This document shows, piece after piece, positions 1,843 to 35,542 of a stretch of 64,000 nucleotides of DNA. The position numbers and the translations under genes were made by a program. The notes beneath the pieces are model-generated. The model searched no databases, was not told where the DNA came from, and was given only the letters and a program-made list of their open reading frames with translations. The DNA lies in the IMG/VR virus record IMGVR_UViG_3300020578_000006, positions 62,001 through 126,000 of that record. One strand, written 5' to 3'. Each line of letters starts with the position of its first letter. The stretch's first letter is position 1.

Positions 1843-2031
1843 ATGGAACTAGATGATATATTAGCGTTTTTTAATGAAGATGCTTTATGCCCAGAAAACA
1901 TTAAAAATTGTAGATCTCTTAGAGATGCTTACTTTAAAGAGTACAATGGCCTTTTAAACAAAAAATGTGAACATTGTACTTTAGTATCCTTGAGAGACAA
2001 GTATATTAAAATTATTTCTCAAAATGAATAA
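1843..2031 (+). CDS. Small hypothetical protein with CxxC (CEHC)
   Basis: ORF packed between co-oriented genes with overlapping stop/start. Confidence 0.6.
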   Translation: MELDDILAFFNEDALCPENIKNCRSLRDAYFKEYNGLLNKKCEHCTLVSLRDKYIKIISQNE

Positions 2032-2797
2032 GATTCTAATTGTAGGCAAGGGATATGTGGGCTCTGCTGTTGTATCTATATTTAAAAAAGATGAATGTGT
2101 AATAGTAGACCCAAGATATAGTAGAATAAAACTAGAAGATTTAAAAGGTCAAAAATTTAAAACAATTTTTGTTTCGCTGGACACTCCTAAAGAAGACAAT
2201 TTTTACTTACTTCAATCTGTTGTTAAGAAAATAAACAAACTATTACCTGGTAATATTGTTTGCTGTAAATCAACCGCGCTTCCTTTAATTTATGAAAAAA
2301 TAGAACGGGTCAACAAGAACATTTCTGTAATACATTATCCAGAATTTCTCTCGCACCGCACTAATATAAAAGATTTTAAGACCCAGAAATTTATTATCTT
2401 AGGCGGTTCAAAATCTAGCTGTATAGTGGTAAGCAGCTTGCTTAAGAGCCGACTTAAAAAGGTTAAAAAAGTCATTTACACCGATATTAAAACAGCTTCA
2501 TTGGTCAAGTATGCTAGTAATTCGTTTTTGGCATCAAAGATAACTTTTTTTAATGAGCTTTATAAAATTTTTAAAAAGAGCAAAATCAAATCTACCTTTA
2601 GTACTTTTGTAGAGATTTTATTAAATGATAACAGAATAGGCAAATCACATACAGTTGTACCAGGTACAGACGGTAGATTTGGATGGGGTGGGCATTGTTT
2701 TAATAAAGATATTTTACATTTATATAGATTTTCTAATAGCAAGTTGTTAAAATATATTTTTAATCTAAACAAACAACACAGAAAACTTTATGTATAG
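2024..2797 (+). CDS. ugd: UDP-glucose/GDP-mannose 6-dehydrogenase family protein (short form)
   Basis: Rossmann IVGKGYVG, KST, PEFL, KYASNSFLASKITFFNEL, catalytic GGHCFNKD; C-terminal domain absent. Confidence 0.8.
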   Translation: MNKILIVGKGYVGSAVVSIFKKDECVIVDPRYSRIKLEDLKGQKFKTIFVSLDTPKEDNFYLLQSVVKKINKLLPGNIVCCKSTALPLIYEKIERVNKNISVIHYPEFLSHRTNIKDFKTQKFIILGGSKSSCIVVSSLLKSRLKKVKKVIYTDIKTASLVKYASNSFLASKITFFNELYKIFKKSKIKSTFSTFVEILLNDNRIGKSHTVVPGTDGRFGWGGHCFNKDILHLYRFSNSKLLKYIFNLNKQHRKLYV

Positions 2798-3657: not shown

Positions 3658-4134
3658 ATGGATAAACTGTATTTAACTTGGAATGAAGTTACAGATCAAT
3701 TAAAAATTATTCACAATCAAACAAAGCATCTAGATAGTAATTCCGCAGTCATAGGCCTGTCTAGAGGCGGTTTAGTACCAGCGGTTATAATATCGCACCT
3801 CAAAAACATTAGCTGCTTTTATAGCTGTGGCATTAAGAGCTACTCTGAGCACAACAAGTCAACGGAAATAATGTTTCAATACCCAGATAAACAGGAATTA
3901 AGAAATAAGGAGATTGTGTATGTTGTTGATGATATTTGTGATACAGGGGGTACCTTAAAATTTATTGAAAATTATTTGTTGCCTATTAAGATGGTTTCAA
4001 TTACACTAATATATAGGCAGAATGAATTGTATAAGCCAAATTATTTTGGTAAAGAACTCTTTGACAAGAGATGGGTTGTTTTTCCTTGGGAAGAGACTAA
4101 ATATTACACTACTAAAGAACATAGTTTTTCTTAG
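3658..4134 (+). CDS. Type I purine phosphoribosyltransferase (Gpt/XGPRT-like)
   Basis: IGLSRGGLVPA, PRPP-binding VVDDICDTGGT, WVVFPWE. Confidence 0.85.
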   Translation: MDKLYLTWNEVTDQLKIIHNQTKHLDSNSAVIGLSRGGLVPAVIISHLKNISCFYSCGIKSYSEHNKSTEIMFQYPDKQELRNKEIVYVVDDICDTGGTLKFIENYLLPIKMVSITLIYRQNELYKPNYFGKELFDKRWVVFPWEETKYYTTKEHSFS

Positions 4135-5216: not shown

Positions 5217-5413
5217 TTTACTTTCTTTTTATTTACTTTAATTAAAATACCTGTACCTGAGCTAGGGGCAATACCGGGGAGATTGGCGCCTTTAAACCCT
5301 TGAGGAAGCAAGCCACGATCATCTATATTTGGACCTGTGCCTTGACCCGGTCTATCAAAACTACCGTTGCCTAATCCTTCGTAAATTTTTTTAATAGAGT
5401 CGTCAAATTTCAT
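5189..5413 (-). CDS. Small Gly/Pro-rich hypothetical protein
   Basis: TAATG stop/start overlap with upstream fiber gene. Confidence 0.6.
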   Translation of the reverse strand: MKFDDSIKKIYEGLGNGSFDRPGQGTGPNIDDRGLLPQGFKGANLPGIAPSSGTGILIKVNKKKVNQRTPEKKV

Positions 5414-6801
5414 TATGTCTTAATAATCTTTGTAACAATAGCAGAAGGTTGAATATTAGTGTGTGCTTGTGCGGCATTAGACTCACCCACATTACTGGTT
5501 GTCGTTGTGTAATCAAGAGGGAACGTAATAGTAAAAGGTGTTGCACTATGGCCATCGGTAATAACTTCAGATGTTACATACATTCTTGCAAAAGATACAC
5601 CGGCGTTCCAGTTTCGATTAATATAGCCTCCACCACCATCTCCGTTGATGTTTTGCTGTCTTTCTGCATCTTTCCACAGTCCAGCAGGGACTGTTGTTAC
5701 CCTATTTACATTAGCCCCGGGTCCAGCTCTTACTGCAAACGCACCATCATCTCCGCCCCCGCCATAACCAAAGTAATGTTGGTGGTTAAGGGGAATATTA
5801 ACCGTATTCTGCAAGGTAGTGGTTACGGAGAAATTATGTGCGTGCGATCTTAAACCGCTTTGGTTTGCTGTAAGAAGAACTGATTCTAAACCACCTGTCT
5901 GTCCTACAGCACTTCCTAATGTCAGAGAACCAACACCACCAGATCCAACTGTTACTCGGCGCCTTAGATCAGGTACATTAAATGTTGAAGTACCATTCCC
6001 TGCACCCCATAGTGTACCAATTACATTAAATAGAGTTGAAAAAGCTGCACGGCTTACCGCTGTACCATCACACAGTAAATAACCTACCGGTGCGATTGTG
6101 CCTGCAAAATCTAAAATAGTGCCTGTTGGTACTGCTGCTACATTTGCGTTTACTATAGGGGCTAAAGATTGTGCCAATAGCGCCATTGGAACATCTGTGG
6201 GCATACCAACTGTATTAAATCTTGCCTTTACCGTGTTTGCTGGCATGTTGGCCAGCTTTGTATTATCTATCCCGGCAATCGCAACACTTAAACTATTACC
6301 AACAAAAGTCAATCCACCTGTTGGGTCTGGGATTTGAACTATTTGATCTGAAGAAATCCTCTCCAATCCACGCCCAATAGCAGTACCGGTGAAGTAAGTC
6401 CCGTCTAAACTATTTTGCTTTACACTAAATGTATTACCAACTTTGGTAATAGTCACGTTATCGGGCGCTAGCGTAACTCCAAACCTAGCATAATCTGCTA
6501 CTAAACCAGGATTTGAACCGGTTAATGCAAAAATACTAGAAGTAATTGTATCGTAAATTATATCCCCGATTTGACCTCTCATATTAATCTGATCAAATGA
6601 AAGGTTGGTTGTTGTTTCCCCAAAAGTAGCAACACCCAGGTTTTTCATCCCTACAGCAACACCACCCGCTGTGGTACCGTCACCTATAAACAATCTTTTA
6701 GCATCAATTGTGTATCCTGGCTCACCTTGAAGTAATACTAGGTTGGTCTTTTCACTAAAGTTGCCTTTTCTAAAGACTATTCGTGTAATTGGGTCAGGCA
6801 T
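5413..6801 (-). CDS. Short tail fiber-like protein with phage tail collar domain
   Basis: Mtd_N-like N-terminus (LLQGEPGYTIDAKRLFIGDG); collar VPTGTILDFAG...YLLCDG...FNVPDLR; HxH motifs (SHAH, NHQH) in tip. Confidence 0.8.
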   Translation of the reverse strand: MPDPITRIVFRKGNFSEKTNLVLLQGEPGYTIDAKRLFIGDGTTAGGVAVGMKNLGVATFGETTTNLSFDQINMRGQIGDIIYDTITSSIFALTGSNPGLVADYARFGVTLAPDNVTITKVGNTFSVKQNSLDGTYFTGTAIGRGLERISSDQIVQIPDPTGGLTFVGNSLSVAIAGIDNTKLANMPANTVKARFNTVGMPTDVPMALLAQSLAPIVNANVAAVPTGTILDFAGTIAPVGYLLCDGTAVSRAAFSTLFNVIGTLWGAGNGTSTFNVPDLRRRVTVGSGGVGSLTLGSAVGQTGGLESVLLTANQSGLRSHAHNFSVTTTLQNTVNIPLNHQHYFGYGGGGDDGAFAVRAGPGANVNRVTTVPAGLWKDAERQQNINGDGGGGYINRNWNAGVSFARMYVTSEVITDGHSATPFTITFPLDYTTTTSNVGESNAAQAHTNIQPSAIVTKIIKT

Positions 6802-8551: not shown

Positions 8552-10810
8552 ATGAATAATCAGATCTTTGTAAAAAAACGTAATGGAAATGCAGAAAAAT
8601 TTGATATTGAAAAAATTCACAGAGTAATCAGATGGTCAATTGAAGGGTTAGACGGGGTAAGCCTATCGGATATAGAAATAAACGCCAAGCTCAATATGGT
8701 GCAAAATGTTACCACTAAAGAAATTCATCAAAGTCTTATTGAAGCAGCTTCTAACCTTATTTCAGTAGAATCACCTAACTATCAGTATGTTGCTTCTAGA
8801 CTATTAAACTATCAGTTACGAAAAGACGTTTGGGGAGGCAAACACGCTCCAAGATTGTTAGATATGATTTATGGTGGAATTAGAAGAAAGATTTATGACC
8901 CTTCTATTATAGAAAAATATACAGAAGACGAAATTAATAAAATGGGTGAGTTTATTGATCATGATAGAGATTTTATTTTTACATATGCAGGTATTAAGCA
9001 GCTGTGTGACAAATATTTAATTAAAAATAGAATATCAGGTACTATTTTTGAAACTCCTCAATTTGCTTATATTCTAATTGCTGCATATGCTTTTGTTAAT
9101 TATAATCCTGAGGATAGGTTAATATACATTAAAAGATTTTACGATGCTATTTCTAAGCATAAAATTAATCTACCAACACCAATTATGGCCGGGGTTAGAA
9201 CAGTATCAAGAGGGTACGCGAGCTGCTGCTTAATTGGTGTAGATGATACAAAAGAATCTATTACTGCTTCCGGTACTGCAGTATCTTTAGCCACGGCTAG
9301 TAGGTGTGGTATTGGTATAGATATTTCTCGTGTCCGGGCAATGGGCACCCCGGTTAATGGTGGTTCAGTTGTGCATACAGGGGTTATCCCCTTTTTAAAG
9401 ATATTCGAAGCATCGGTTAAAGCGTGGCAGCAAAATTCTATAAGAGGAGGTTCCGCTACTGTTAATATACAGTGGTGGCATTACGAGATTGAGGATGTAG
9501 TTGTATTAAAGAATAATGCTGGTACTGATGATAACAGAGTCAGAAAATTAGACTATACTGTCGGAATGTCAAAACTATTTTATGACAGGGTTATAAAAAA
9601 TGAAAACGTAACATTATTTTCACCCAACGAAGTTCCTCACCTTTGGGGAGCATGGGGAACACCTGGTTTTGATAAAATATATGCAGAATGTGAGCAAGAT
9701 AAGAAAATTAAATTTAAAAAGAAGATTTCTGCAAGAAAGCTATTTTCACTTATAATTAAAGAAAGAGTAGAAACCGGTAGAATATATATTTTAAACGTCG
9801 ATACGGCAAACGAACACGTTGCATGGCTAGATCAAGTCACCATGTCAAATCTGTGCACAGAAATTATTCACCCTTATATTCCTTTAAAAGATTTTCATGA
9901 TCAGGAAGCGGAAATAGGAATGTGTATTTTATCAGCAGTGAATATGTTAGAAATTAAGAATTGGAATGAATTAGAAAAGGTGTGTGAGTTAATAGTTAGA
10001 TTTTTAGATGAAATTATAGATGTACAAGATTATTTTAATAAAGCTGCAGAAAATTTTGCTAAGCACCGACGTAGCCTAGGCATAGGTATTACAAACTTGG
10101 CTGCGTTTTTAGCTAAAAACGACGTAAAATACACTTCTAGTAAAGCTCTTCCAATAATTGATGAATGGATGGAGCATTTTCAATACTATCTTTTAAAAGC
10201 TAGTTTGACTCTTGCAAAAGAAAAAGGTAAATGTGAAAAATTTGATCGAACAAAGTATTCTAAGGGCATACTACCTATAGATACTTTTAAGAAAAACACT
10301 ACAGAGATTGTTAAGAGAAAACTATCACTAGATTGGGGTACATTAAGAGAGGAAATTAAAAAACACGGCTTAAGACACAGCACAGTTTCAGCCATAATGC
10401 CTTGTGAATCTAGTTCCGTTATTCAAAATTCTACTAATGGGGTAGAGCCTATTCGCTCACTCATTACCTACAAAATGTCTAAGATGGGTAAATTGCCTGT
10501 ACTGGTTCCAGGCATAGGGAAATATGATCAAAATTATGAGTTAGCTTTTAGTCTACCAGATAATACAGGTCTTATTAATCTTAACGCCGTAATGCAAAAA
10601 TATATAGACATGGCTATTTCTACTAACATATACTATAATTACAGTCATTATGATGGCCACACTTTACCAGATGCTAAAGTAATGAAAGAAATTATGTATG
10701 CATATAGCATGGGTTTGATTAGTTTGTATTATAACAATACAGATGATGGTGATAAGGAGCAGTTAATTACAAAAGAAGACTCTTGTTCTAGTGGGGCATG
10801 TAAACTATGA
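8552..10810 (+). CDS. nrdA: Ribonucleotide reductase class Ia alpha subunit with ATP cone
   Basis: ATP cone VKKRNGNAEKFD, PTPIMAG, ASCCL, NLCTE active site, C-terminal CSSGAC. Confidence 0.97.
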   Translation: MNNQIFVKKRNGNAEKFDIEKIHRVIRWSIEGLDGVSLSDIEINAKLNMVQNVTTKEIHQSLIEAASNLISVESPNYQYVASRLLNYQLRKDVWGGKHAPRLLDMIYGGIRRKIYDPSIIEKYTEDEINKMGEFIDHDRDFIFTYAGIKQLCDKYLIKNRISGTIFETPQFAYILIAAYAFVNYNPEDRLIYIKRFYDAISKHKINLPTPIMAGVRTVSRGYASCCLIGVDDTKESITASGTAVSLATASRCGIGIDISRVRAMGTPVNGGSVVHTGVIPFLKIFEASVKAWQQNSIRGGSATVNIQWWHYEIEDVVVLKNNAGTDDNRVRKLDYTVGMSKLFYDRVIKNENVTLFSPNEVPHLWGAWGTPGFDKIYAECEQDKKIKFKKKISARKLFSLIIKERVETGRIYILNVDTANEHVAWLDQVTMSNLCTEIIHPYIPLKDFHDQEAEIGMCILSAVNMLEIKNWNELEKVCELIVRFLDEIIDVQDYFNKAAENFAKHRRSLGIGITNLAAFLAKNDVKYTSSKALPIIDEWMEHFQYYLLKASLTLAKEKGKCEKFDRTKYSKGILPIDTFKKNTTEIVKRKLSLDWGTLREEIKKHGLRHSTVSAIMPCESSSVIQNSTNGVEPIRSLITYKMSKMGKLPVLVPGIGKYDQNYELAFSLPDNTGLINLNAVMQKYIDMAISTNIYYNYSHYDGHTLPDAKVMKEIMYAYSMGLISLYYNNTDDGDKEQLITKEDSCSSGACKL

Positions 10811-11871
10811 AATCTGTATTAAATTTAAAAAACATCGATCACACTAAGCAGCCTTTATTTTTTGGGGAAGACTTAAATTTACAACGTTATGATAGATTTA
10901 AGTATCCGGTATTTTTTGAGTTATTCAAAAGACAAGAAGAATTTTTTTGGTGGCCTCATGAAATTTCCCTGCAAAAAGATAGAGCTGATTATAAAGATCT
11001 AACACCGGAAGAAAGATTTGTGTTTGATACAAATTTAAAGTTTCAAACATTAGGTGATAGTATGCTATCTAGATCTATACACTCGTTAAAAGACTATGTT
11101 TCTAGCCCGGAACTAGAAATATGTATGAACACCTGGCAAAGGTTTGAAGGGATCCATAGCTACAGCTATAGCTATCTTCTCAACAACGTACATCCAGATG
11201 CATCTAAATTTTTTGATAGTATAATGGATGATAAAGAAATAGTAAGTAGAGCAGAACTAATTCGTAAAAATTACGATAAAATCTTAGGTGGGGAAGATAA
11301 AAAAGATGTTAAGGAAAAGATTTTTGACTGCATTCTAGCAGTCAATGTAATGGAAGGACTAGTGTTCTATGTTAGTTTTGCCTGTTCATTTTACTTTGGG
11401 TACAGAGGTAAAATGGAAGGAAATGCTAAAATTATTAAGTTTATTCAAAGAGATGAAGCTCAACACTTTGCTATAACTCAAAATCTTATTAAAATTCTTC
11501 GAGATGAAGACAAAGAAGGGTTTACATCAACCGTAAAAAAGAATGAAGATAAGATTTATGCTATATATGAACAAGCAACAAAAAATGAAATCGAATGGGC
11601 ACAATATCTTTTTAGTAAAAGTTCATTATTAGGTTTAAATGCTGAGGTCTTAGGGTCATATGCAAAATGGCTTTGTGATAATAGACTACGGTCTCTCGGT
11701 TACAAAAAAGTCTTTAATCAAAAAGAAAATCCAATTGCAGGTTGGTTGGACAGTTATCTAGACAGCAGTAAAGTCCAAGTAGCCCCACAGGAGGCAGAAA
11801 TAGGTGCATACAAAATTGCGGCGCGCGATACAACGATTACAGAAGACGTTTTCGACGACATTAAGTTGTAA
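10807..11871 (+). CDS. nrdB: Ribonucleotide reductase class Ia beta subunit
   Basis: FWWPHE, QTLGDS, EGIHSYSY (radical Tyr), MEGLVFYVSFA, RDEAQH, VAPQE..AY. Confidence 0.96.
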   Translation: MKSVLNLKNIDHTKQPLFFGEDLNLQRYDRFKYPVFFELFKRQEEFFWWPHEISLQKDRADYKDLTPEERFVFDTNLKFQTLGDSMLSRSIHSLKDYVSSPELEICMNTWQRFEGIHSYSYSYLLNNVHPDASKFFDSIMDDKEIVSRAELIRKNYDKILGGEDKKDVKEKIFDCILAVNVMEGLVFYVSFACSFYFGYRGKMEGNAKIIKFIQRDEAQHFAITQNLIKILRDEDKEGFTSTVKKNEDKIYAIYEQATKNEIEWAQYLFSKSSLLGLNAEVLGSYAKWLCDNRLRSLGYKKVFNQKENPIAGWLDSYLDSSKVQVAPQEAEIGAYKIAARDTTITEDVFDDIKL

Positions 11872-11874
11872 TCT

Positions 11875-11882
11875 TATAAATA
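11875..11882 (+). promoter_or_regulatory. Late promoter TATAAATA
   Basis: 8 nt before ATG 11891. Confidence 0.6.
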
Positions 11883-11890
11883 TTAAACAG

Positions 11891-13090
11891 ATGATTCCTG
11901 TTTTTAATACAAAGAGGTTGGAGGCCAACCATTTATATCCTACTTTATTTGGGTTTTCTACTAGAAATAAAGTAGCTGCTAATCTTTTAAACTATGTTTA
12001 CGGGGTTGTGATGGTGGTCGCAATGGCATTTGCATTCCATGCACTAAGTCTCATATTATCCGACTGGAATAAGATATTTGTTTTTCTTGCTAGTTTAGCT
12101 GTTGTAGGGTTGCCTTATTGTGTTAAGATTGTTTTGTTTGGTAACGAAAGATTTGAAGCAAAACACGCCTATCTGTGTTTGGCTATAAGCGTTTTGCCTG
12201 CTATTTTCGATTTTATAGGGTTTTATAGTGAAACAAGCATTAAGCAGACATTAACCCAGACAAAATTTGAAATTGTAGAGAAAATAAGTTACTTTAACAC
12301 TGAAGCTCGTGAAAAATTAGAACAGGAGAAGATTTCTCTACTACAAAAAAGAGATAAAGAACTCGCTGATATTAAATCCAAGTCAGCTCAAAAATTAACA
12401 CAACTTGAGGCTAGGTTGACCAACGCAAAGCAGACTTTTATAGATGAAACTGAAGGAGTTAAGGGGCAATATACAACTGGTAAAATCGGTAGCGGACCAA
12501 GAGCAAAGGAATATCAAGCAGAAATAAGAAAGACACAAGCTTCTAACGAACTAGAAGAAAGAAAAATTCTTCAGGAGCAAGAAATAGACGCAGAAACTAT
12601 TAATAATAAGTATCAGGCCCTAATAGATCAGTGTGATGCCGGTTTAAAAGAGATAGATACATTAGTTTCTAGTGATAATAAAGCAAAAGGACTTCTATAT
12701 CAAGTCAATAATGTAACTAACTTTTCAGATTTATCTAAAGTTACAATTACAGTTAATAATAGTATATCTAATATAAGCTCTAAGATGGGTCTTGAGCCTA
12801 AGTTTGTCTCTTATTCTACAGATGATGTAATACAGCTTTCATTTAGTGCTTTATTGCGTGGTGATATTACTGCATTAGTTTGCTTTTTGCTAGCAGTTCT
12901 CTTAGAAATGGTTGACATAGTTATTGTTTTTATGATAAGAGGTACTCGTAAATCTGAAATAGTTGAAATAAAAGAAGAAGAAAAGAACAAAATATTTTTT
13001 AAAAAATATGATTCTGAAATAAAATCAGAAAAAAATCCTCAAGCAATAGAGCAAATATTTCACCCCTACCAAAATTATACAAAACATTAA
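11891..13090 (+). CDS. Multi-TM coiled-coil membrane protein, DUF4407-like
   Basis: Start reassigned to ATG 11891 (after TATAAATA); N-terminal TMs, long coiled coil with GKIGSGPRA, C-terminal TM. Confidence 0.55.
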   Translation: MIPVFNTKRLEANHLYPTLFGFSTRNKVAANLLNYVYGVVMVVAMAFAFHALSLILSDWNKIFVFLASLAVVGLPYCVKIVLFGNERFEAKHAYLCLAISVLPAIFDFIGFYSETSIKQTLTQTKFEIVEKISYFNTEAREKLEQEKISLLQKRDKELADIKSKSAQKLTQLEARLTNAKQTFIDETEGVKGQYTTGKIGSGPRAKEYQAEIRKTQASNELEERKILQEQEIDAETINNKYQALIDQCDAGLKEIDTLVSSDNKAKGLLYQVNNVTNFSDLSKVTITVNNSISNISSKMGLEPKFVSYSTDDVIQLSFSALLRGDITALVCFLLAVLLEMVDIVIVFMIRGTRKSEIVEIKEEEKNKIFFKKYDSEIKSEKNPQAIEQIFHPYQNYTKH

Positions 13091-16685: not shown

Positions 16686-16690
16686 AAAAT

Positions 16691-16696
16691 TATTTA
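16691..16696 (-). promoter_or_regulatory. Late promoter core TAAATA (3D protein-gp5 operon)
   Basis: 5 nt before GTG 16685. Confidence 0.65.
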
Positions 16697-16697
16697 A

Positions 16698-16725
16698 TTG
16701 ATTATACTGTTTAACAAGTTATATT
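16698..16725 (+). promoter_or_regulatory. Sigma70-like promoter of the deazaguanine operon
   Basis: TTGATT-N16-TATATT, 7 nt before ATG 16733. Confidence 0.65.
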
Positions 16726-16732
16726 ATATAGA

Positions 16733-17539
16733 ATGAAAGTTTCTCATGAGACCCCTATTTCACTGTTAGATTATTCTAGAGATTACAATGATTTTGACTA
16801 TTGTTTAGTACATTTATTAGATAAACACCCTGATTACAAGGAGTTTTATAAGACAGCAAGACCTATTTACAATCGAGAAGTACTTCTAGACAATTCTATA
16901 TTTGAATTAGGCAAAGCATTTGACGCAGAGGCTTTCTATAAAGCAGCTTTAGAACTAGAACCTAATATGTTCATAGTTCCAGATGAACTGGAAGATATGA
17001 CCGGTACGATACAAAGCTTTAAAAGCTTTACAAACAAAATGCAAGATTTAAAAAACACCTTTCTAACCAAGGCCATTGGTGCTGTGCAGGGTAAAAACTG
17101 GCAAGAGTTAACCGAGTGTTATAAGTTTATATCTGATAACGCAGATATGGTTGCAATAAGTTTTGATTTTAGTTATTACCAGGTAACAGGTCGCGGTTGG
17201 CACCATTTAGAGCGTTGGTGTTCGGGTCGTCAGCGCTTTATTCAAGATTTAATAAATAATGGTCTATGGAGGTGGGATAAGCCTCATCATTTGTTGGGAT
17301 GCTCACTAGCAAAAGAATTTCGTTACTATGTCGATAGAGGTATTCACAATATTGTGTCTTGTGATACTAGCAATCCAATTGTTGCCGCTATTCATGAAAT
17401 AAAGTATGATGCGGATTATGGGCTAGACACTAAACCTTCTACTAAGCTTGCAGATCTGATTAGTCATGAATTTACACCTGAACAATTAGAGATGGTTAAG
17501 TACAATACTACAATGTTTAAGAAAATTATTCGTAGATGA
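16733..17539 (+). CDS. dpdA: TGT-fold deazaguanine transglycosylase-like protein (DpdA family, probably DpdA3-type)
   Basis: TGT-like motif order LLDNS, IVPD, AVQG, HHLLG, SCDTS with both candidate catalytic Asp; in operon with queF. Confidence 0.7.
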   Translation: MKVSHETPISLLDYSRDYNDFDYCLVHLLDKHPDYKEFYKTARPIYNREVLLDNSIFELGKAFDAEAFYKAALELEPNMFIVPDELEDMTGTIQSFKSFTNKMQDLKNTFLTKAIGAVQGKNWQELTECYKFISDNADMVAISFDFSYYQVTGRGWHHLERWCSGRQRFIQDLINNGLWRWDKPHHLLGCSLAKEFRYYVDRGIHNIVSCDTSNPIVAAIHEIKYDADYGLDTKPSTKLADLISHEFTPEQLEMVKYNTTMFKKIIRR

Positions 17540-18105
17540 GACCCTGGGTAGCATTTTTCTCTCAAACAGGAACAGAGATTCATAATTTAAGCAATGAAAT
17601 AGGGGTGTATCCTGATGCTATCATTACAAATAATCCTACTATATCTAAGATTAATTCTGCTTTAAGATATGTAACAGAGTTTAGAACCAATAAACTAAAT
17701 CGAGAAATATTGCACACACTTACTTCTAAGCCAACAGTAGAAGAATATGAAAATATTTTAAGTAAATTTAAGAACCCTATACTAACTTTACACGGTTATT
17801 TAAGAATTATACCAAAACAAATTTGTGAAAAGTATGAAACTTACAATCTACACCCGGGATTAATAGACAAATATCCAGAGTTGAAAGGGTTTAACCCTCA
17901 AGAGCGTGCCTACAGGGATAACTACAAGCTAGCCGGTTGTGTTATTCACAAAGTAACACCAGAAGTTGATGAAGGAGAGATTTTAATGAGCCAAGGCATT
18001 AGTATAGAGGGGTTAACTCTTAATGAGGTCTATGAAAAATTACACGATACGGCTTTTGATCTGTGGAAAAGTTTTTTTTCCGCTTATAATGTTTTAAAGG
18101 GCTAA
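17536..18105 (+). CDS. PurN-like 10-formyl-THF formyltransferase (DpdN-like)
   Basis: FFSQTGT, LHGYLRII, NLHP (catalytic N,H), GCVIHKVTPEVDEG (catalytic D). Confidence 0.85.
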   Translation: MRPWVAFFSQTGTEIHNLSNEIGVYPDAIITNNPTISKINSALRYVTEFRTNKLNREILHTLTSKPTVEEYENILSKFKNPILTLHGYLRIIPKQICEKYETYNLHPGLIDKYPELKGFNPQERAYRDNYKLAGCVIHKVTPEVDEGEILMSQGISIEGLTLNEVYEKLHDTAFDLWKSFFSAYNVLKG

Positions 18106-18106
18106 T

Positions 18107-19072
18107 ATGGACGTTTCTTTACATTATAAAAATGTTTTTTTAAAGCCTAATTTCAATTCTGTTAAGTCGAGAAAAGAAATTGACACACATGTACAGTTTT
18201 GTGATCGGGTTTTCAGGTTACCTGTTATACCCGCTAACATGAAATGTTGTGTAGACTATGAAACTTGTCAGATGTTAGATAAAAACAACTACTTTTATAT
18301 AATGCATAGATTTGATATAGACATTTTAAACTTTGTTAAGTATGCAAATTTGCAGAACTTTCATAATGTTTCAATTAGTATCGGTATACAGGATAAAGAT
18401 AGGCACATTATTAACGAATTATCACATATTTCTCAGCTTGGTAGGTTAGATTTCATAACTATTGACGTTGCCCACGGTCATCACTCTAAGGTTTGTGGTC
18501 AAATTAAGTTTATTAAAGATAGACTCCCAGCAGTTAGAGTAATTGCGGGTAATGTAGCATCGTATAAGGGGGTAGAATATTTAAGAGACTCTGGAGCAGA
18601 CGCCGTAAAGGTAGGTATTGGTGGTGGTTATGCGTGTACTACTAAGGATAAAACAGGATTTACCCATCCTATGTTTAGTTGTATAATGGAATGTGCCCAA
18701 GACAACAATTTACCTGTTATCGCCGATGGTGGTATACGCAATAACGGTGATATTTCTAAAGCTATTGTTGCAGGAGCTACAATGGTAATGTGTGGTTCTA
18801 TATTTGCTGCATGTTCAGATAGCCCAGCCCCAATAGTTAAGGATTCCTCCGGGCATAGATACAAACAATACTACGGCTCAGCAAGTATTCACAATAAAAT
18901 TGAAAAAAGAAATATTGAAGGTACAATGAAGCTTATGGAAGCTGATACAACAACCTATTTAGAGAAGCTAGAGGAAATTGAACAAGATTTACAGAGTGCA
19001 ATAAGCTACGCAGGTGGTTGCAATCTTAAAGCTCTTAACCTACATAATGTATCTTACGGGGTAAGAATGTAA
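18107..19072 (+). CDS. guaC: GMP reductase (short, Bacillus-type)
   Basis: LPVIPANM, YFYIMHRF, TIDVAHGH, KVGIGGGYACTTK (catalytic Cys), ADGGIR, YGSAS, EQDLQSAISYAGG. Confidence 0.92.
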   Translation: MDVSLHYKNVFLKPNFNSVKSRKEIDTHVQFCDRVFRLPVIPANMKCCVDYETCQMLDKNNYFYIMHRFDIDILNFVKYANLQNFHNVSISIGIQDKDRHIINELSHISQLGRLDFITIDVAHGHHSKVCGQIKFIKDRLPAVRVIAGNVASYKGVEYLRDSGADAVKVGIGGGYACTTKDKTGFTHPMFSCIMECAQDNNLPVIADGGIRNNGDISKAIVAGATMVMCGSIFAACSDSPAPIVKDSSGHRYKQYYGSASIHNKIEKRNIEGTMKLMEADTTTYLEKLEEIEQDLQSAISYAGGCNLKALNLHNVSYGVRM

Positions 19073-19416
19073 TGGGAGAAGATTATATTAAAATTGTAGA
19101 GTCCACGTATCCAGAGACGTGTGAAGAGTTTAAAAAAATACAGAAAGAGCAATATGAAGTTTTTTGTAAGAAGCAGTTTGATTATGGGCCCCACAATATT
19201 AGTCTTGGCTCAGATCTTCACAAAAAAGAAGACATAATAGCGTCTATATCAGCAATTGTAGTAAGGTTAAACGACAAAATTCAACGGCTTATTAATATGG
19301 TTTTAAGAAAAAAAACATTTGAAGCGGCAAATGAGCCAATTTTTGATGCTTTTAGCGATACCTCTGTATATTGTATTATTGCAGAAATAGTTAAAAGAAA
19401 AAAGTGGTGTAAGTAG
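19072..19416 (+). CDS. Nucleotide modification associated domain 1 (Nmad1/DUF1599; all-alpha MazG-like)
   Basis: KKQFDYG, RLNDKIQRL, E.I.DAFSD...Y. Confidence 0.75.
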   Translation: MGEDYIKIVESTYPETCEEFKKIQKEQYEVFCKKQFDYGPHNISLGSDLHKKEDIIASISAIVVRLNDKIQRLINMVLRKKTFEAANEPIFDAFSDTSVYCIIAEIVKRKKWCK

Positions 19417-19439
19417 TAGTTGTAGTTATAATAGAGTAA

Positions 19440-20024
19440 GTGAATATTACTTTTACTGGGCCGCAGTGTTCGGGTAAGACTACTTTGCTCAAGCAAATGA
19501 AGCAGACTAGAGGTATTATGGATCAGTTTTTTTATATTGAAGAAGTTACTAGATTAGTAAAGAGGGAGTTTAATGTTAGGATAAATGAAGAAGGTGCAAA
19601 CGATATAACTCAATTGTTAATTTTAAATAAGGAACTAGAGAATTTATTTAAATACGATTATGAACTTTGGCCGGGATGTAAAGGTAATGTACATGATAGA
19701 TGCCTACTAGATGGTTTGGTATTTACAGAATATTTTTATGATAAAAAACTTGTAAGTCAGCAAATCTGGTCACAAGCGTTAAACTATTGGAATCGTTTTT
19801 ATCATAAATACGATATTATATTTTATCCCGATCCCCATGAAATAAAATTAGTCGATGACGGTGAGAGAAGTGTTGACGTAGATTTTAGAAATAATATTAT
19901 AGACAAGTATGAGAATTACTATCTAGATCAATTTCAATGGAAAGATAAAGTTGTAAGACTGAAAGGAACAGTAGAAGAGAGAATAGGGATGATTAAAAGT
20001 ATTATAGATTTTTATACAAAGTAG
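19440..20024 (+). CDS. P-loop nucleotide kinase (AAA_28/NadR-like; putative dNMP kinase)
   Basis: ITFTGPQCSGKTT Walker A, HDRCLLD, DDGER. Confidence 0.75.
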   Translation: MNITFTGPQCSGKTTLLKQMKQTRGIMDQFFYIEEVTRLVKREFNVRINEEGANDITQLLILNKELENLFKYDYELWPGCKGNVHDRCLLDGLVFTEYFYDKKLVSQQIWSQALNYWNRFYHKYDIIFYPDPHEIKLVDDGERSVDVDFRNNIIDKYENYYLDQFQWKDKVVRLKGTVEERIGMIKSIIDFYTK

Positions 20025-20032
20025 TATAAAAT
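20005..20032 (+). promoter_or_regulatory. Internal sigma70-like promoter for queF
   Basis: TAGATT-N16-TAAAAT, 7 nt before ATG 20040. Confidence 0.5.
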
Positions 20033-20039
20033 ATATTCA

Positions 20040-20957
20040 ATGAGCAATACCATTTTAGATAATAGCAATATTTCAAAGCATCTCGGTAAAATAACCGGTT
20101 ATAAATCAACATATGACCCGACGTTGTTGGTAAGAGAGCCTAGAATTAACAATAGAAAGCATTTAGGAATTACAGATGAGGATGTTCCGTTTGGTGGTTA
20201 TGATATTTGGAATGCTTATGAAGTTTCCTGCTTAACAAAAGAGGGTATGCCTATTGCTGCTATAGCTAAGATTGTTTACCCGGCTAAAAACAAATACATC
20301 GTAGAGTCAAAGTCGATAAAGCTGTATATGAATTCGTTTAATATGCAAAAGTTTGAAGGAAATATTATTTCTATTTTAATGCAACTTCAAGATACGATTG
20401 CATCTGATCTTTCTAAGCTTTTAGAAACTGACGTCAAGGTATATGTAAGATCTACCAAATCAGTAGATGATGGTTTGTATTATCCACCGGTCTTTTCAAA
20501 TAAAGACTACCCGACGTTAGAGAATTTTATTGATGTAACTACTATTAAAGCGCCTTTTTACACAGAAAATCCCGATATTTTGAGTGCTGAAAAAATTAAT
20601 GAATCTAAAGTACAAAGATTCCACTCCGCATTATTAAAAAGTAATTGCAGAGTTACTTCTCAACCTGATTGGGGAGATGTTTACATTCACTACAAGGGTA
20701 AATATGAAATTAATCCAACTTCTCTTTTACAATATATTGTTTCTTTTAGAGATGAATGTCATTTTCACGAAGAGATTTGTGAAACTATTTATATGAGAAT
20801 TTTTCGAAAGTTTTTTCCCGAAGAGCTAGTTGTTAGCTGTTTATATGTAAGACGTGGTGGTATTGATATCAATCCAACAAGGTCGAGTAATCATAGTCTT
20901 TTAGACAAATCGTTAATTGACGAGTTTAAATATTTTACAAAAACGGTCAGACAGTAA
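20040..20957 (+). CDS. queF: NADPH-dependent preQ0 (7-cyano-7-deazaguanine) reductase, long bimodular type
   Basis: DIWNAYE, ESKSIKLYMNSF (QueF motif), catalytic CRVTSQPDWG, FHEEICE, RRGGIDINP. Confidence 0.93.
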   Translation: MSNTILDNSNISKHLGKITGYKSTYDPTLLVREPRINNRKHLGITDEDVPFGGYDIWNAYEVSCLTKEGMPIAAIAKIVYPAKNKYIVESKSIKLYMNSFNMQKFEGNIISILMQLQDTIASDLSKLLETDVKVYVRSTKSVDDGLYYPPVFSNKDYPTLENFIDVTTIKAPFYTENPDILSAEKINESKVQRFHSALLKSNCRVTSQPDWGDVYIHYKGKYEINPTSLLQYIVSFRDECHFHEEICETIYMRIFRKFFPEELVVSCLYVRRGGIDINPTRSSNHSLLDKSLIDEFKYFTKTVRQ

Positions 20958-20958: not shown

Positions 20959-21324
20959 TTAAGACAGCTTTAACAAATAACTAGTCTGATTCAATACCCC
21001 AAGCATTTCATCTCGTATGTTTAATAAGTCCGTGTCCTTTTCAGGGTTTAATCTTTGAGATATTTCCGATAAAAAGAGCTTGTACGTATCTAGCGCATCA
21101 CAAACACTAACACTTTTTATGTCAAAGAGTTCTATATTCATTTCCCCATTGGCTAACTCTACACTATCCCTACCCAGTGCCGTTTCAACAAAAGTATCAA
21201 TTAATTCATCTAAAGATTCATAAGCTTTGCCTAAAGCTTTATGTGCACTGTAACTTTTTGTCTGCCAATGAAAAACCCTTAGTTGATTTTGCATTTGAAG
21301 CAAATCTTTAACAACTGACTGCAT
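20959..21324 (-). CDS. Ferritin/Dps-like small protein (DUF5856-like)
   Basis: QLRVFHWQT.SYSAHKAL...YESLDELIDTFVE. Confidence 0.7.
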   Translation of the reverse strand: MQSVVKDLLQMQNQLRVFHWQTKSYSAHKALGKAYESLDELIDTFVETALGRDSVELANGEMNIELFDIKSVSVCDALDTYKLFLSEISQRLNPEKDTDLLNIRDEMLGVLNQTSYLLKLS

Positions 21325-34759: not shown

Positions 34760-35542
34760 TCAAAAATTAAAGTGGAAATTTGCAAACTGATCGTGTAAGT
34801 GACCTAATATTTCTTTACTATCATCTTTTACAGGCTTTATTTCTGGACGGATAGTATGAAGATCAGTAAACCCGTGTTCGGCATCATTTTCTTTTGTGTA
34901 TTGTTGTATATTGTTAAAATTATGTTCATAATAATTTTTATCTAAAAATTTGTATATTCCTTGTATGATACGTTTGGGAGTTTGAGTCAATTCATCAAAA
35001 TCTACAAAATAAAATTTATCCCGGTGCCCTCTCATGACCGCATCTCGGATGGTATTAAATGTACCGCCCACCAATCCCTCTTGACTGGTCCAGGTGTTAA
35101 TACGACCTTCTAACGTGCCTAAATTTGGCCCCGTTTCCATAGGACTGTTGATGAGTTTAATTTCTTTACGGTATAGTTTTTCCAAAGAAGAAAGAATACA
35201 GGTAATTTTGCGGGTGGTGGTTAAAATTTTAATAGGATAACCAAAGGCATTCTCTATTAATTCAATCAAAGTACTCCACCCTCTGCTTTTATTAAATACT
35301 ATAGGCCTGTCTGTATCAGAATGGTAACTCTGAAATAGATCTTTAATAATCTGTAACTGCTTTTCGGAAGTTTCCGATGCTTTAATAACCGGGTTTTGTT
35401 TCCAGAATTGATGAACACCCCGTACTAATTCACTTAACCCACTAGTGGGGGTAACATGAAAATCAGGGTTTTGTGCTAAAATATTGCAAAGCAACGTACT
35501 TCCTGAACGAGGCATGCCATTGATAAAATATATTTCTTTCAC
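34760..35542 (-). CDS. PAPS-dependent sulfotransferase family protein
   Basis: 5'-PSB loop FINGMPRSGSTLL, FNKSR, TTR...CILSS (3'-PB-like). Confidence 0.8.
   Translation of the reverse strand: MKEIYFINGMPRSGSTLLCNILAQNPDFHVTPTSGLSELVRGVHQFWKQNPVIKASETSEKQLQIIKDLFQSYHSDTDRPIVFNKSRGWSTLIELIENAFGYPIKILTTTRKITCILSSLEKLYRKEIKLINSPMETGPNLGTLEGRINTWTSQEGLVGGTFNTIRDAVMRGHRDKFYFVDFDELTQTPKRIIQGIYKFLDKNYYEHNFNNIQQYTKENDAEHGFTDLHTIRPEIKPVKDDSKEILGHLHDQFANFHFNF

What the first reader, a model, noticed from the sequence alone, without database searches (positions are those of the whole stretch)
16733..20957. Six-gene operon for 7-deazaguanine (formyl-preQ1-type) DNA hypermodification
Seen: tightly coupled genes for a TGT-fold protein (LLDNS / AVQG / HHLLG / SCDTS), a PurN-like formyltransferase with intact N-H-D triad, GuaC, Nmad1, a P-loop kinase and bimodular QueF, behind one early-type promoter. 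Known: QueF reduces preQ0 to preQ1; DpdA proteins exchange deazaguanines for guanine; as I recall, a PurN paralog (DpdN) with DpdA3 yields formyl-preQ1 (fdPreQ1) in a Flavobacterium phage (verify this recollection). Inference: this phage replaces G with an N-formyl-aminomethyl-7-deazaguanine to evade restriction and CRISPR nucleases, in a T4-like lineage with a probably different host.
Basis: partly seen in the sequence, partly recalled or inferred. Interest (0 to 1): 0.9.

Follow-up and report, generated by a model that had tools for sequence, protein, structure and literature searches.

The report
Phage genes replacing guanine with formyl-deazaguanine
A freshwater T4-like phage carries a tight six-gene cluster that very probably swaps every guanine in its DNA for a formylated 7-deazaguanine, a known anti-restriction trick, and its conserved partner genes suggest the swap may be made on free nucleotides rather than on finished DNA.

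Summary
Six tightly coupled + strand genes at 16733-20957 encode a DpdA3-type TGT-fold protein, a DpdN-type PurN paralog, a GMP reductase, a divergent Nmad1/DUF1599 protein, an AAA_28 P-loop kinase and a bimodular QueF.

[quoted passage not shown] In that phage's DNA, fdPreQ1 was measured as a complete replacement for dG (PMC10516641).

FolE, QueD-like, QueE-like and QueC lie 29-52 kb further along a contig that shares identical proteins with the window. This is a new member of a known kind.

What the literature held here does not explain:
- Every DpdA3 lineage examined keeps a P-loop kinase-fold gene beside DpdA3.
- Most also keep an NTP pyrophosphohydrolase, an HD-domain protein or a purine phosphoribosyltransferase nearby.
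- Nmad1 occurs only together with DpdN and is fused to it in some phages.
- DpdA3 lacks the Zn site of TGT and DpdA.

These features fit a T4-hmC-like, nucleotide-level route as well as, or better than, the published post-replicative model. No chemistry was tested, and the "early promoter" has no statistical support.

The parts
16686..16732 (+). 47-base divergent intergenic region with a sigma-70-like match (TTGATT, 16/18 nt, TATATT/TATTAT at 16698-16727)
   Evidence: This is only a consensus match. The number of such sites in the region equals the shuffled expectation, so a promoter is plausible from position but not shown.
16733..17539 (+). DpdA3-type 7-deazaguanine transglycosylase (minimal TGT-fold TIM barrel, 268 aa, no Zn site)
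   Evidence: 46.6/45.8/41.5% identity to the IBB_35, CP220 and immuto DpdA3 proteins. AlphaFold pLDDT 92.2; Foldseek top hits are all Z. mobilis TGT. Invariant residues include D53, D84, G116, G120, D138, D145, H185-H186-L-L-G-C190 and S209-x-D211-T-S-N-P215; Q119 is conserved in at least 90% of relatives. There is no Cys after C210.
17536..18105 (+). DpdN-type formyltransferase (PurN paralog, 189 aa)
   Evidence: Formyl_trans_N 4.6e-15. PurN TIGR00639 scores only 50 bits against a cut-off of 150. 47.8% identity over the full length to immuto DpdN YP_010114479; the next best phage hits are 26-35%. N104, H106 and D145 are invariant in 98 relatives.
18107..19072 (+). GMP reductase (GuaC, type 2; 321 aa); an optional insertion in this clade
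   Evidence: NF003966 331 bits (cut-off 344). PDB 1ypf matches at 9e-71 over residues 6-311, including the GIGxGxxCxTKxKTGF catalytic loop. It sits in the operon in 16 of 61 complete related loci. In four of the 80 loci a copy lies about 4 kb upstream of DpdA3.
19072..19416 (+). Divergent Nmad1/DUF1599-family four-helix protein (114 aa), partner of DpdN
   Evidence: No direct Pfam hit. Relatives found with its profile hit PF07659. AlphaFold gives four helices at pLDDT 87, with no significant PDB fold match. Present in 40 of 45 DpdN-containing loci and 0 of 16 loci without DpdN. Fused to the C-terminus of DpdN in L054, L056, L060, P0244 and P0247.
19440..20024 (+). AAA_28 P-loop kinase-fold protein (194 aa), the constant companion of DpdA3
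   Evidence: AAA_28 6e-15; phrog_2107 'thymidylate kinase' 2e-29. 34% identity to the genes next to DpdA3/DpdN in CP220 and immuto. Present in 61 of 61 complete loci. Walker A G7/G12/K13/T15 plus R38, R87, D91, R143 and R181 are invariant in 120 relatives. Among cultured phages it is found almost only in DpdA3 carriers.
20040..20957 (+). Bimodular (type II) QueF, the preQ0-to-preQ1 nitrile reductase (305 aa)
   Evidence: QueF_N 4.7e-34 and QueF 4.7e-21; TIGR03138 266 bits (cut-off 293). 45% identity to immuto QueF. The QueF motif E89-S-K-S-I-K-L-Y96, C203, D210, H243 and E244 are invariant in 115 relatives.
3658..4134 (+). 6-oxopurine phosphoribosyltransferase (158 aa), a probable accessory of the pathway located outside the operon
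   Evidence: Pribosyltran 2.9e-11. PDB purine PRTase 1vdm 1.5e-15 and E. coli XGPRT 4e-6. 31.5% identity to the PRTase embedded in immuto's Que cluster. It recurs 7-9 kb upstream of DpdA3 in 13 related loci and inside the cluster in L277.
8552..11871 (+). Class I ribonucleotide reductase NrdA/NrdB (context: the phage's own deoxynucleotide supply)
   Evidence: Ribonuc_red_lgC 2.4e-125 and Ribonuc_red_sm 2.9e-55.

Best explanation
The six genes are the late part of a pathway that replaces guanine in the phage's DNA with a 7-deazaguanine, most probably 7-(formylamino)methyl-7-deazaguanine (fdPreQ1).

Proposed steps:
1. preQ0 is made from GTP by FolE, a QueD-like protein, a QueE-like protein and QueC (next to a separate glutamine amidotransferase). 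These genes lie 29-52 kb to the right of the window on a contig that shares identical proteins with it.
2. QueF (ORF6) reduces preQ0 to preQ1.
3. DpdA3 (ORF1), a stripped-down TGT-fold enzyme, exchanges guanine for the deazaguanine by the TGT double-displacement chemistry. D53 would be the acid/base and D211 the nucleophile, by position.
4. DpdN (ORF2), working with the Nmad1 protein (ORF4), transfers a formyl group from a formyl-folate to the aminomethyl nitrogen.
5. The P-loop kinase (ORF5) handles a nucleotide form of the product.
6. GuaC (ORF3) and the upstream purine phosphoribosyltransferase drain or recycle guanine nucleotides.

What is shown: the gene identities, intact catalytic residues, orthology and synteny with a phage whose DNA was measured, and the conserved partnerships.

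What is inferred: every activity, the final base, and the level at which the exchange happens.

On that last point I lean slightly (about 45-50% against about 40%) to a nucleotide-level route that works as in T4 hmC synthesis: DpdA3 exchanges the base on dGMP, the kinase makes the diphosphate, and the polymerase incorporates the triphosphate. The alternative is the published post-replicative exchange in DNA. The confidence given here is for the function of the module, not for that lean.
For: Identity and synteny: the window has DpdA3-DpdN-(GuaC-Nmad1)-kinase-QueF and immuto has DpdA3-small ORF-DpdN-kinase-QueF, at 41.5, 47.8, 34 and 45% identity. Immuto DNA has dG fully replaced by fdPreQ1 (PMC10516641).

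Fold and residues: the ORF1 fold matches TGT. Catalytic residues are intact and invariant in DpdA3, DpdN, QueF and the kinase.

precursor genes: QueC (1e-48), FolE (4.5e-48), PTPS/QueD-like (2.6e-16) and a Fer4_12 radical-SAM-like candidate QueE are on ENA contig k141_1448690, which carries proteins identical to the window's.

Conserved module: of 61 related viral loci with enough flank, 61 have both kinase and QueF, and 45 have DpdN. The same A-(N)-K-F order occurs on MAG-binned contigs from other habitats.

For the nucleotide-level lean:
- A P-loop kinase-fold gene sits beside or close to DpdA3 in all lineages looked at: this lineage, immuto, CP220, phiST, MA9V-3 and the Bacillus/Weizmannia phages. 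In immuto DpdN lies between DpdA3 and the kinase.
- An NTP pyrophosphohydrolase-like, HD-domain or dCTP-deaminase-like gene is adjacent or close by in four of them: PRA-PH in immuto, HD in CP220, MazG in phiST, DCD-like in MA9V-3.
- The DpdA1 phage 9g has neither next to its DpdA.
- Relatives of the kinase in 50,697 phage records are almost confined to DpdA3 carriers.
- DpdA3 lacks the Zn site and is acidic (mean pI 5.5).
- DpdN's parent enzyme PurN acts on a ribonucleotide.
- A NUDIX-Nmad1 fusion exists.
- DpdA3 expressed in E. coli gave no modification, and ADG nucleoside was seen in CP220-infected cells (PMC10516641).
Against: - No chemistry was measured for this phage, and its host is unknown.
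- DpdN and DpdA3 activities are predictions even in the reference phage.
- Every characterised TGT-superfamily enzyme acts on a polynucleotide, not on a mononucleotide.
- The T4-like lineage shows no recognisable dGTP-clearing enzyme in the cluster. Nmad1 is not detectably related to MazG or PRA-PH, and its model has no significant PDB match.
- The loci counted are phylogenetically related, so the co-occurrence counts overstate independence.
- QueF (266 against 293 bits) and GuaC (331 against 344 bits) fall just under NCBIfam equivalog cut-offs.
- The QueE assignment rests on a weak Fer4_12 hit (9e-5).
Confidence: 0.82

Rival explanations
1. The end product is the same, but the exchange happens strictly after replication, as published. 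DpdA3 flips out each G in phage DNA and inserts preQ1, and DpdN then formylates dPreQ1 in DNA, with Nmad1 as its DNA-binding partner. The P-loop protein is an ATP-using helper of DpdA3, playing the role of DpdB for bacterial DpdA. The phosphoribosyltransferase and GuaC recycle the large amount of expelled guanine, back to GTP for preQ0 synthesis or on to IMP and AMP.
For: All characterised relatives (TGT, bacterial DpdA, phage DpdA1/2) act on polynucleotides. Bacterial DpdA needs DpdB and ATP (PMC10164549). [quoted passage not shown] Guanine salvage would give the 6-oxopurine PRTase and GuaC an obvious job. The T4-like cluster has no recognisable dGTPase.
Against: - The partner has the size, Walker A, D-R motif and multiple invariant arginines of small nucleoside/nucleotide kinases. 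It does not look like a ParB-like DpdB.
- MazG, PRA-PH and HD genes next to DpdA3 in other lineages have no role in this model.
- Complete replacement is otherwise typical of pre-replicative pathways (established knowledge for T4 hmC, SPO1 hmU and S-2L aminoadenine).
- DpdA3 lacks the Zn site, which PMC10164549 reports as conserved in the DpdA family, and is acidic.
- DpdA3 expressed in E. coli was inactive.
Confidence: 0.4
2. The module modifies DNA, but the final base is not fdPreQ1. It could be plain dPreQ1, or a derivative made with another one-carbon or acyl donor. In that case ORF2 would serve purine or folate metabolism, or would formylate something else.
For: DpdN activity has never been demonstrated. 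16 of 61 related loci lack DpdN altogether and are DpdA3-kinase-QueF only, so a preQ1-type end product exists in the family. Cyanophages carry PurN-like genes unrelated to DNA modification.
Against: ORF2 is 47.8% identical to immuto DpdN and only 26-35% identical to other phage formyltransferases. It scores far below the PurN cut-off. It is translationally coupled between DpdA3 and the rest of the operon. The N-H-D triad is invariant. In immuto, which has this gene, fdPreQ1 was found and dPreQ1 was not.
Confidence: 0.1
3. The genes do not modify phage DNA. They would be auxiliary metabolic genes that boost the host's queuosine tRNA modification or purine salvage during infection.
For: QueF, GuaC and a purine PRTase are ordinary cellular enzymes, and phage GuaC genes occur without any deazaguanine genes.
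Against: ORF1 is not a tRNA TGT. It gives no PF01702 hit, has no Zn site and is 268 aa long, and its only cultured relatives are in phages with fully substituted DNA. Homologues are essentially absent from cellular genomes: 12 hits among 185,579 species' genomes, all on MAG contigs, most of them carrying other genes of the same phage-type module.
Confidence: 0.03

Closest known systems
[quoted passage not shown] 2023, PMC10516641)
   Same: DpdA3, DpdN, an AAA_28 kinase and bimodular QueF lie in the same order at 34-48% identity, and a purine-type PRTase is in the genome. The paper also lists three uncultured Caudovirales DpdN proteins with the full pathway. They may belong to the present lineage, but this could not be checked because the supplements are not held.
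   Different: - Here GuaC and an Nmad1 protein are inserted between DpdN and the kinase.
- Immuto has a PRA-PH/MazG-like hydrolase directly upstream of DpdA3, and its Que genes are contiguous. Here FolE, QueD, QueE and QueC are 29-52 kb away.
- The host phage is T4-like (family B polymerase, gp23) rather than an Immutovirus with a family A polymerase.
Campylobacter Firehammervirus CP220 group (dADG replaces all dG; DpdA3)
   Same: The closest cultured DpdA3 (46% identity), followed directly by a homologous AAA_28 kinase (34% identity).
   Different: There is no QueF or DpdN; the pathway stops at CDG/ADG. An HD-domain/AAA_33 fusion precedes DpdA3. The end product is different.
Bacterial Dpd system (DpdA/DpdB) and tRNA-guanine transglycosylase
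   Same: A TIM-barrel fold, with acidic residues at the C-terminal ends of barrel strands in TGT-like motifs (LDNS, DTSNP).
   Different: DpdA3 has no CXCX2CX22H zinc site, is about 120-130 residues shorter, gives no Pfam TGT hit, and has a kinase-fold rather than a ParB-like partner.
T4 hydroxymethylcytosine pathway (gp56 dCTPase, gp42 dCMP hydroxymethylase, gp1 dNMP kinase) and the S-2L aminoadenine pathway (MazZ, PurZ, DatZ). An analogy in how it may work, not a family relation.
   Same: The same logic of gene sets: an NTP (pyro)phosphohydrolase, a base-altering enzyme and a dedicated nucleotide kinase, with complete replacement of one base. This rests on established knowledge of those pathways, and the gene sets are seen beside DpdA3.
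   Different: There is no sequence relationship. The base would be swapped rather than derivatised. No hydrolase was recognised in the T4-like cluster itself. None of this is tested.

Membership tests
DpdA3 (Hutinet et al. 2023) | Direct sequence homology to the DpdA3 proteins of CP220 and immuto | tested here: met
   41.5-46.6% identity over 92-98% of the length, E 1e-50 to 6e-54. The phiST/MA9V-3 branch is linked through immuto at 26%.
DpdA3 (Hutinet et al. 2023) | Distant TGT/DpdA fold | tested here: met
   AlphaFold pLDDT 92.2, pTM 0.89. The Foldseek top 50 are all TGT, E 1e-8, probability 1.00.
DpdA3 (Hutinet et al. 2023) | Encoded together with 7-deazaguanine synthesis genes | tested here: met
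   QueF is in the operon. QueC, FolE, QueD-like and QueE-like genes are on a contig sharing identical proteins with the window.
DpdA3 (Hutinet et al. 2023) | Complete replacement of dG in virion DNA / base-exchange activity | not testable with these tools
   This needs LC-MS/MS of DNA or an enzyme assay. The activity is unproven even for the reference proteins.
TGT / bacterial DpdA | Structural Zn site CXCX2CX22H, reported as conserved in both families | tested here: not met
   There is no cysteine after C210 and no such motif anywhere in the 268 residues. The feature is defined in PMC10164549.
TGT / bacterial DpdA | Three invariant active-site aspartates (acid/base, base recognition, nucleophile) | tested here: inconclusive
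   D53, D84 and D211 are invariant in 39 relatives and sit after barrel strands. Their equivalence to TGT D102/D156/D280 rests on motif resemblance, not on a residue-level superposition.
TGT / bacterial DpdA | Match to Pfam PF01702 (TGT) | tested here: not met
   No hit even at E<=10.
DpdN (preQ1/dPreQ1 formyltransferase) | PF00551 formyltransferase that groups with immuto YP_010114479 rather than with PurN | tested here: met
   47.8% identity over the full length. Other phage formyltransferases are 26-35%. PurN TIGR00639 scores 50 bits against a cut-off of 150.
DpdN (preQ1/dPreQ1 formyltransferase) | Catalytic Asn-His-Asp triad of the PurN superfamily | tested here: met
   N104, H106 and D145 align with the PurN triad and are invariant in 98 relatives.
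DpdN (preQ1/dPreQ1 formyltransferase) | Encoded next to DpdA3 and QueF | tested here: met
   It overlaps the DpdA3 stop codon by 4 bases. 45 of 61 related loci have it in that position.
DpdN (preQ1/dPreQ1 formyltransferase) | Formylation of the 7-aminomethyl group | not testable with these tools
   Not demonstrated for any member.
QueF type II (bimodular) | Two-domain architecture, QueF motif E(S/L)K(S/A)hK(L/Y)(Y/F/W), catalytic Cys | tested here: met
   QueF_N plus QueF are both above their Pfam cut-offs. E89-SKSIKLY-96, C203, D210, H243 and E244 are invariant in 115 relatives. NCBIfam TIGR03138 is slightly below its cut-off (266 against 293). The motif definition is from my own knowledge of the family.
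GMP reductase (GuaC, type 2) | Full-length similarity to solved GMP reductase, including the Cys-containing catalytic loop | tested here: met
   1ypf at 9e-71 over residues 6-311, with GIGGGYACTTKDKTGF aligned to GIGPGKVCITKIKTGF. NF003966 scores 331 bits against a cut-off of 344.
Nmad1 / DUF1599 (PF07659) | Match to the Pfam model | tested here: inconclusive
   ORF4 itself gives no hit at E<=10. Four relatives found with its profile hit PF07659 at 1e-5 to 5e-4, one of them above the gathering score. Membership is therefore transitive.
Thymidylate kinase (as annotated in relatives) | Match to PF02223 | tested here: not met
   ORF5 hits AAA_28, plus weaker AAA_18 and DUF6549 matches, and not PF02223. 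The immuto homologue hits PF02223 at 0.004, below the cut-off. There is no PDB sequence relative. It is a kinase-fold protein of unknown substrate.

The most novel reading that the evidence does not exclude
DpdA3 is not a DNA transglycosylase. It would be the first TGT-fold enzyme that swaps the base on a free deoxynucleotide (dGMP plus a 7-deazaguanine base gives 7-deaza-dGMP plus guanine). Its constant P-loop partner would be the dedicated kinase that sends the product to the polymerase. MazG, PRA-PH, HD or GuaC genes would remove the competing G nucleotides, and DpdN-Nmad1 would formylate at the nucleotide level. [quoted passage not shown]
Probability: 0.45. Interest if true: 0.85.

Novelty: new member of a known kind. 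Interest (0 to 1): 0.62.

Why it matters
Complete replacement of a canonical base blocks most restriction enzymes and many CRISPR nucleases. The window shows that the fdPreQ1-type system is not a curiosity of one Flavobacterium phage. It sits in a very abundant aquatic T4-like lineage: more than 4,500 protein clusters are homologous to its DpdA3, and the contigs carrying them reach 230 kb.

The comparative picture assembled here gives a concrete, cheap test of how total G replacement is achieved. That picture has four parts:
- DpdA3 is always accompanied by a kinase-fold protein.
- It is often accompanied by an NTP hydrolase and a purine phosphoribosyltransferase.
- Nmad1 is tied to, and sometimes fused with, DpdN.
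- DpdA3 has no Zn site.

It may also explain why DpdA3 failed when expressed in E. coli. If the exchange is made on nucleotides, the enzymes would be a route to 7-substituted 7-deaza-dGTPs for biotechnology.

Tried and rejected
1. Nmad1 as a MazG-like dGTP pyrophosphohydrolase. hhalign of the ORF4 family against the immuto PRA-PH family and against a phage MazG gave probabilities of 0.1-0.2%. Foldseek of the ORF4 model found nothing below E=2. The idea is not supported.

2. The 'methyltransferase' next to the kinase homologue of Streptomyces phage LukeCage as a hidden DpdA3. hhalign probability was 0.1%. Rejected.

3. Nucleotide-level similarity to any cultured phage. Megablast found none.

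4. Direct sequence search of ORF1 and ORF5 against the PDB gave only chance hits.

5. Looking for FolE, QueD, QueE and QueC in the window and within 10 kb of DpdA3 in 80 related loci found none. A scan with immuto QueC returned only immuto-like contigs. The genes were found only by walking along contigs with all 12 look-ups.

6. Riboswitches and tRNAs: no Rfam family and no tRNA in the window.

7. Promoter and terminator scans gave counts equal to the shuffled expectation.

8. The supplementary tables of PMC10516641, wanted to check whether the three uncultured DpdN phages are this lineage, are not held.

9. A literature search found no paper in the library that proposes a kinase-dependent or pre-replicative route for DpdA3.

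Full report
**Observation**

The region 16733-20957 holds six + strand ORFs. The junctions are a 4-base overlap, a 1-base gap, a 1-base overlap, and gaps of 23 and 15 bases. Upstream lies a 47-base divergent gap next to a baseplate-hub/peptidase pair on the other strand. Downstream lies a convergent DUF5856 gene.

Family searches confirm five of the six labels directly:
- ORF2 is a Formyl_trans_N protein. It scores far below the PurN equivalog cut-off (50 bits against 150).
- ORF3 is a type 2 GMP reductase. It aligns end to end with PDB 1ypf (9e-71), catalytic loop included.
- ORF5 is an AAA_28 P-loop protein.
- ORF6 is a bimodular QueF. The QueF motif (E89-SKSIKLY-96) and C203, D210, H243 and E244 are intact.
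- ORF1 has no Pfam, NCBIfam or PDB sequence match.
- ORF4 has no Pfam match at all.

The single "early-type promoter" is a 9-of-12 consensus match at 16698-16727. Such matches are no more frequent in this region than in shuffled sequence.

**What ORF1 is**

tblastn against 50,697 phage records finds ORF1 in only 20 of them:
- 14 Campylobacter phages of the CP220 group, at about 46% identity;
- four records of Flavobacterium phage immuto, at 41.5%, annotated "DNA guanine transglycosylase";
- two distant hits.

Hutinet et al. 2023 (PMC10516641) defined these proteins as DpdA3, the DpdA subfamily associated with complete replacement of G.

An AlphaFold model built on 39 relatives is confident (pLDDT 92.2, pTM 0.89). 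Its 50 best PDB matches are all Zymomonas tRNA-guanine transglycosylase (E 1e-8, TM 0.65-0.72).

ORF1 lacks one feature reported as conserved in TGT and bacterial DpdA, the CXCX2CX22H zinc site (PMC10164549). It has no cysteine after position 210. It is also about 120 residues shorter than those enzymes. So it is a DpdA3 member and a TGT-fold protein, but not a canonical TGT or DpdA.

**Comparison with the reference phage**

In immuto the gene order is QueD, QueE, PRTase, FolE, a "hydrolase", DpdA3, a small ORF, DpdN, "thymidylate kinase", QueF. Identities of the window's proteins to their immuto counterparts are:

| Window protein | Immuto counterpart | Identity |
|---|---|---|
| ORF1 | DpdA3 | 41.5% |
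| ORF2 | DpdN | 47.8% |
| ORF5 | "thymidylate kinase" | 34% |
| ORF6 | QueF | 45% |
| PRTase (3658-4134) | PRTase | 31.5% |

No other cultured phage has a formyltransferase closer than 35% to ORF2.

Immuto DNA contains no detectable dG, and fdPreQ1 was verified against a synthetic standard. DpdN was named by inference, not by assay.

**Where preQ0 comes from**

The window and the 10-kb flanks of 80 related loci hold no FolE, QueD, QueE or QueC. I walked outward using exact-sequence look-ups. This places the window at about 62,001-126,000 of a 229,717-base freshwater metagenome contig, JGI 3300020578 Ga0194129_10000045.

ENA contig k141_1448690 carries proteins identical to the window's right end. 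On it:
- QueC (PF06508, 1e-48) and an adjacent class II glutamine amidotransferase lie about 29 kb beyond the window.
- FolE (4.5e-48), a QueD-like PTPS (2.6e-16), a 248-residue Fer4_12 protein that is the likely QueE, and a second AAA_28 protein lie about 48-54 kb beyond it.

The phage is T4-like. It has Gp23, a prohead protease, gp25, a T4 portal, gp32, UvsX/UvsY and a family B polymerase.

**The family picture**

80 IMG/VR loci carry ORF1 relatives at 54-100% identity. Of these, 61 have at least 4.5 kb downstream of DpdA3. All 61 have the kinase and QueF. The architectures are:

| Architecture | Loci |
|---|---|
| DpdA3-DpdN-Nmad1-kinase-QueF | 24 |
| the same with GuaC (the window's form) | 16 |
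| DpdA3-kinase-QueF | 16 |
| DpdA3-DpdN-kinase-QueF | 5 |

GuaC is thus an optional insertion. In four of the 80 loci it lies about 4 kb upstream instead.

ORF4 occurs in 40 of 45 loci with DpdN and in none of the 16 without it. In three independent contigs (L054, L056, L060) it is fused to the C-terminus of DpdN.

A profile search of 1.8 billion representatives finds 4,198 relatives of ORF4. Among ten longer ones scanned:
- two are formyltransferase fusions;
- one is a NUDIX fusion;
- four hit PF07659, DUF1599 "Nucleotide modification associated domain 1".

ORF4's model is a four-helix protein with no significant PDB neighbour. I found no link to MazG or PRA-PH. Nmad1-like genes also sit near GuaC, thymidylate synthase and thioredoxin genes in a Microcystis phage and a crAss-like phage. 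No Que or DpdA genes are annotated in the stretches I fetched from those two genomes.

**The unexplained companions of DpdA3**

The ORF5-type kinase is found in only 25 of the 50,697 phage records. Of these, 21 are DpdA3 carriers. The remaining four are Streptomyces phages, in which the neighbouring gene is unrelated to DpdA3.

Its Walker A motif, a D86-R87 pair (R87 invariant, D86 in at least 90% of relatives) and four invariant arginines are what small nucleotide kinases look like.

A P-loop kinase-fold gene lies next to or close to DpdA3 in every lineage I inspected:

| Lineage | Gene order near DpdA3 |
|---|---|
| CP220 | HD/AAA_33 fusion, DpdA3, AAA_28 |
| immuto lineage (80 loci) | PRA-PH-like hydrolase, DpdA3, DpdN, kinase |
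| phiST | MazG, hypothetical, AAA_18, DpdA3 |
| Chryseobacterium phage MA9V-3 | DCD-like, two genes, AAA_18/33, DpdA3 |
| Weizmannia phage Youna2 and Bacillus phage BSTP12 | Walker-A protein of 183-187 residues with a DRF motif, DpdA3-like, DNA polymerase |
| MAG-binned contigs from gut and marine samples | A-(N)-K-F modules |

A 6-oxopurine phosphoribosyltransferase recurs in or near the cluster. In phage 9g, a DpdA1 phage with partial modification, no such kinase or hydrolase flanks DpdA. That is a single control.

**Mechanism**

The chemistry up to preQ1 is standard. For the exchange step there are two models.

*Published model.* DpdA3 exchanges bases in finished DNA. This fits the family's known substrates. 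It lets the phosphoribosyltransferase and GuaC recycle the expelled guanine. The P-loop protein could then be a DpdB-like ATP-using helper.

*Nucleotide-level model.* This copies the logic of T4 hmC and S-2L aminoadenine:
1. A hydrolase funnels dGTP to dGMP.
2. DpdA3 swaps the base on the mononucleotide.
3. The dedicated kinase re-phosphorylates the product.
4. The polymerase incorporates it.

The second model explains several things the first does not:
- the invariant kinase and the adjacent MazG, PRA-PH and HD genes;
- the loss of the Zn subdomain;
- the acidic character of DpdA3 (mean pI 5.5);
- total rather than partial replacement;
- the failure of DpdA3 to work when expressed in E. coli;
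- the ADG nucleoside seen in infected Campylobacter;
- the use of a PurN paralog, whose parent enzyme acts on a ribonucleotide.

Against the second model:
- No TGT-fold enzyme is known to act on a mononucleotide.
- The T4-like cluster shows no recognisable dGTPase.
- My locus counts are not phylogenetically independent.

I put the nucleotide route at about 45-50% and the DNA route at about 40%. Mixed or other schemes take the rest. No paper in the searchable library proposes the nucleotide route.

**Verdict**

The finding is real and its interpretation is essentially right. It is a new member of a known kind, the DpdA3/DpdN/QueF fdPreQ1 system. It sits in a very abundant aquatic T4-like lineage (more than 4,500 homologous protein clusters). 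It differs from the reference by two inserted genes and a dispersed precursor pathway.

Its value beyond cataloguing lies in the conserved companions of DpdA3. They make the open question of how complete G replacement is achieved directly testable with a few enzyme assays.

Noticed in passing
L054:2200-3129, L056:2331-3242, L060:8919-9827; proteins P0244, P0247, P0294: Natural fusions of the DpdN formyltransferase with the Nmad1 domain occur in three separate viral contigs and two database clusters. A NUDIX-Nmad1 fusion also exists. This is Rosetta-stone evidence that Nmad1 works with nucleotide-handling enzymes.
   Followed up: partly
L263:7692-9086 (about 29 kb right of the window end): QueC (234 aa) is followed immediately by a separate class II glutamine amidotransferase (229 aa). 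This is a split version of the Gat-QueC fusion known from other phages. Here it sits next to UvsX and the replicative helicase.
   Followed up: partly
L265:18390-19085: A second AAA_28 P-loop protein (231 aa) lies near the FolE, QueD-like and QueE-like genes, so the genome has two kinase-fold proteins of this family.
   Followed up: no
window 5413-6801 (- strand): A 462-aa tail-fibre-like protein carries an N-terminal Mtd_N (major tropism determinant) domain and a phage tail collar domain. Mtd-type proteins are targets of diversity-generating retroelements. I did not look for a reverse transcriptase or template repeat.
   Followed up: no
window 306-2797 and 34760-35542; L092/L176 upstream of the window: A large island of glycosyltransferases, a UDP-glucose dehydrogenase-like gene, three radical SAM/SPASM enzymes, a GATase, a PIG-L deacetylase and a sulfotransferase sits among the structural genes. 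This suggests elaborate glycan or peptide decoration of the virion, or of DNA.
   Followed up: no
window 39014-39469 (- strand): A 151-aa ORF with a TnsA-like endonuclease N-terminal domain (6e-20) lies inside the head-gene block next to the prohead protease. It is probably a free-standing homing-type endonuclease.
   Followed up: no
window 20959-21324 (- strand): A DUF5856 protein (phrog_858, 'starvation-inducible transcriptional regulator') is convergent with QueF, and the two stop codons are only 1 base apart.
   Followed up: no
L258:6666-6869 and L258:8934-9524: A weak ribosomal protein S21 homologue and a DUF366 protein next to a Methyltransf_21 gene lie in the same phage genome, about 25 kb left of the window.
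   Followed up: no
L009 (Microcystis phage Mel-JY01) 8231-8785 and 12272-13369; L010 (crAss-like cr108_1) 8626-11662: Nmad1-like and GuaC-like genes lie within a few kb of each other in two unrelated phages. They are surrounded by SAM synthase, thymidylate synthase, thioredoxin and polymerase genes, and no Que or DpdA genes are annotated in the stretches fetched.
   Followed up: partly
window 11804-13090: The mechanical ORF (428 aa, GTG start) overlaps the end of nrdB by 68 bases. Gene calls on identical contigs use a later start that gives 399 aa.
   Followed up: no
L271-L282 (genome contigs): DpdA3 relatives occur in only 12 records among the genomes of 185,579 prokaryotic species. All are MAG contigs (binned as Pseudoalteromonas, 'archaeon', Bacilli, Lachnospiraceae, Rhodobacteraceae, Spirochaetia and others), and most carry other genes of the same phage-type module (DpdN, kinase, QueF). 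They are probably phage contigs binned with cells, so these labels are poor host evidence.
   Followed up: partly
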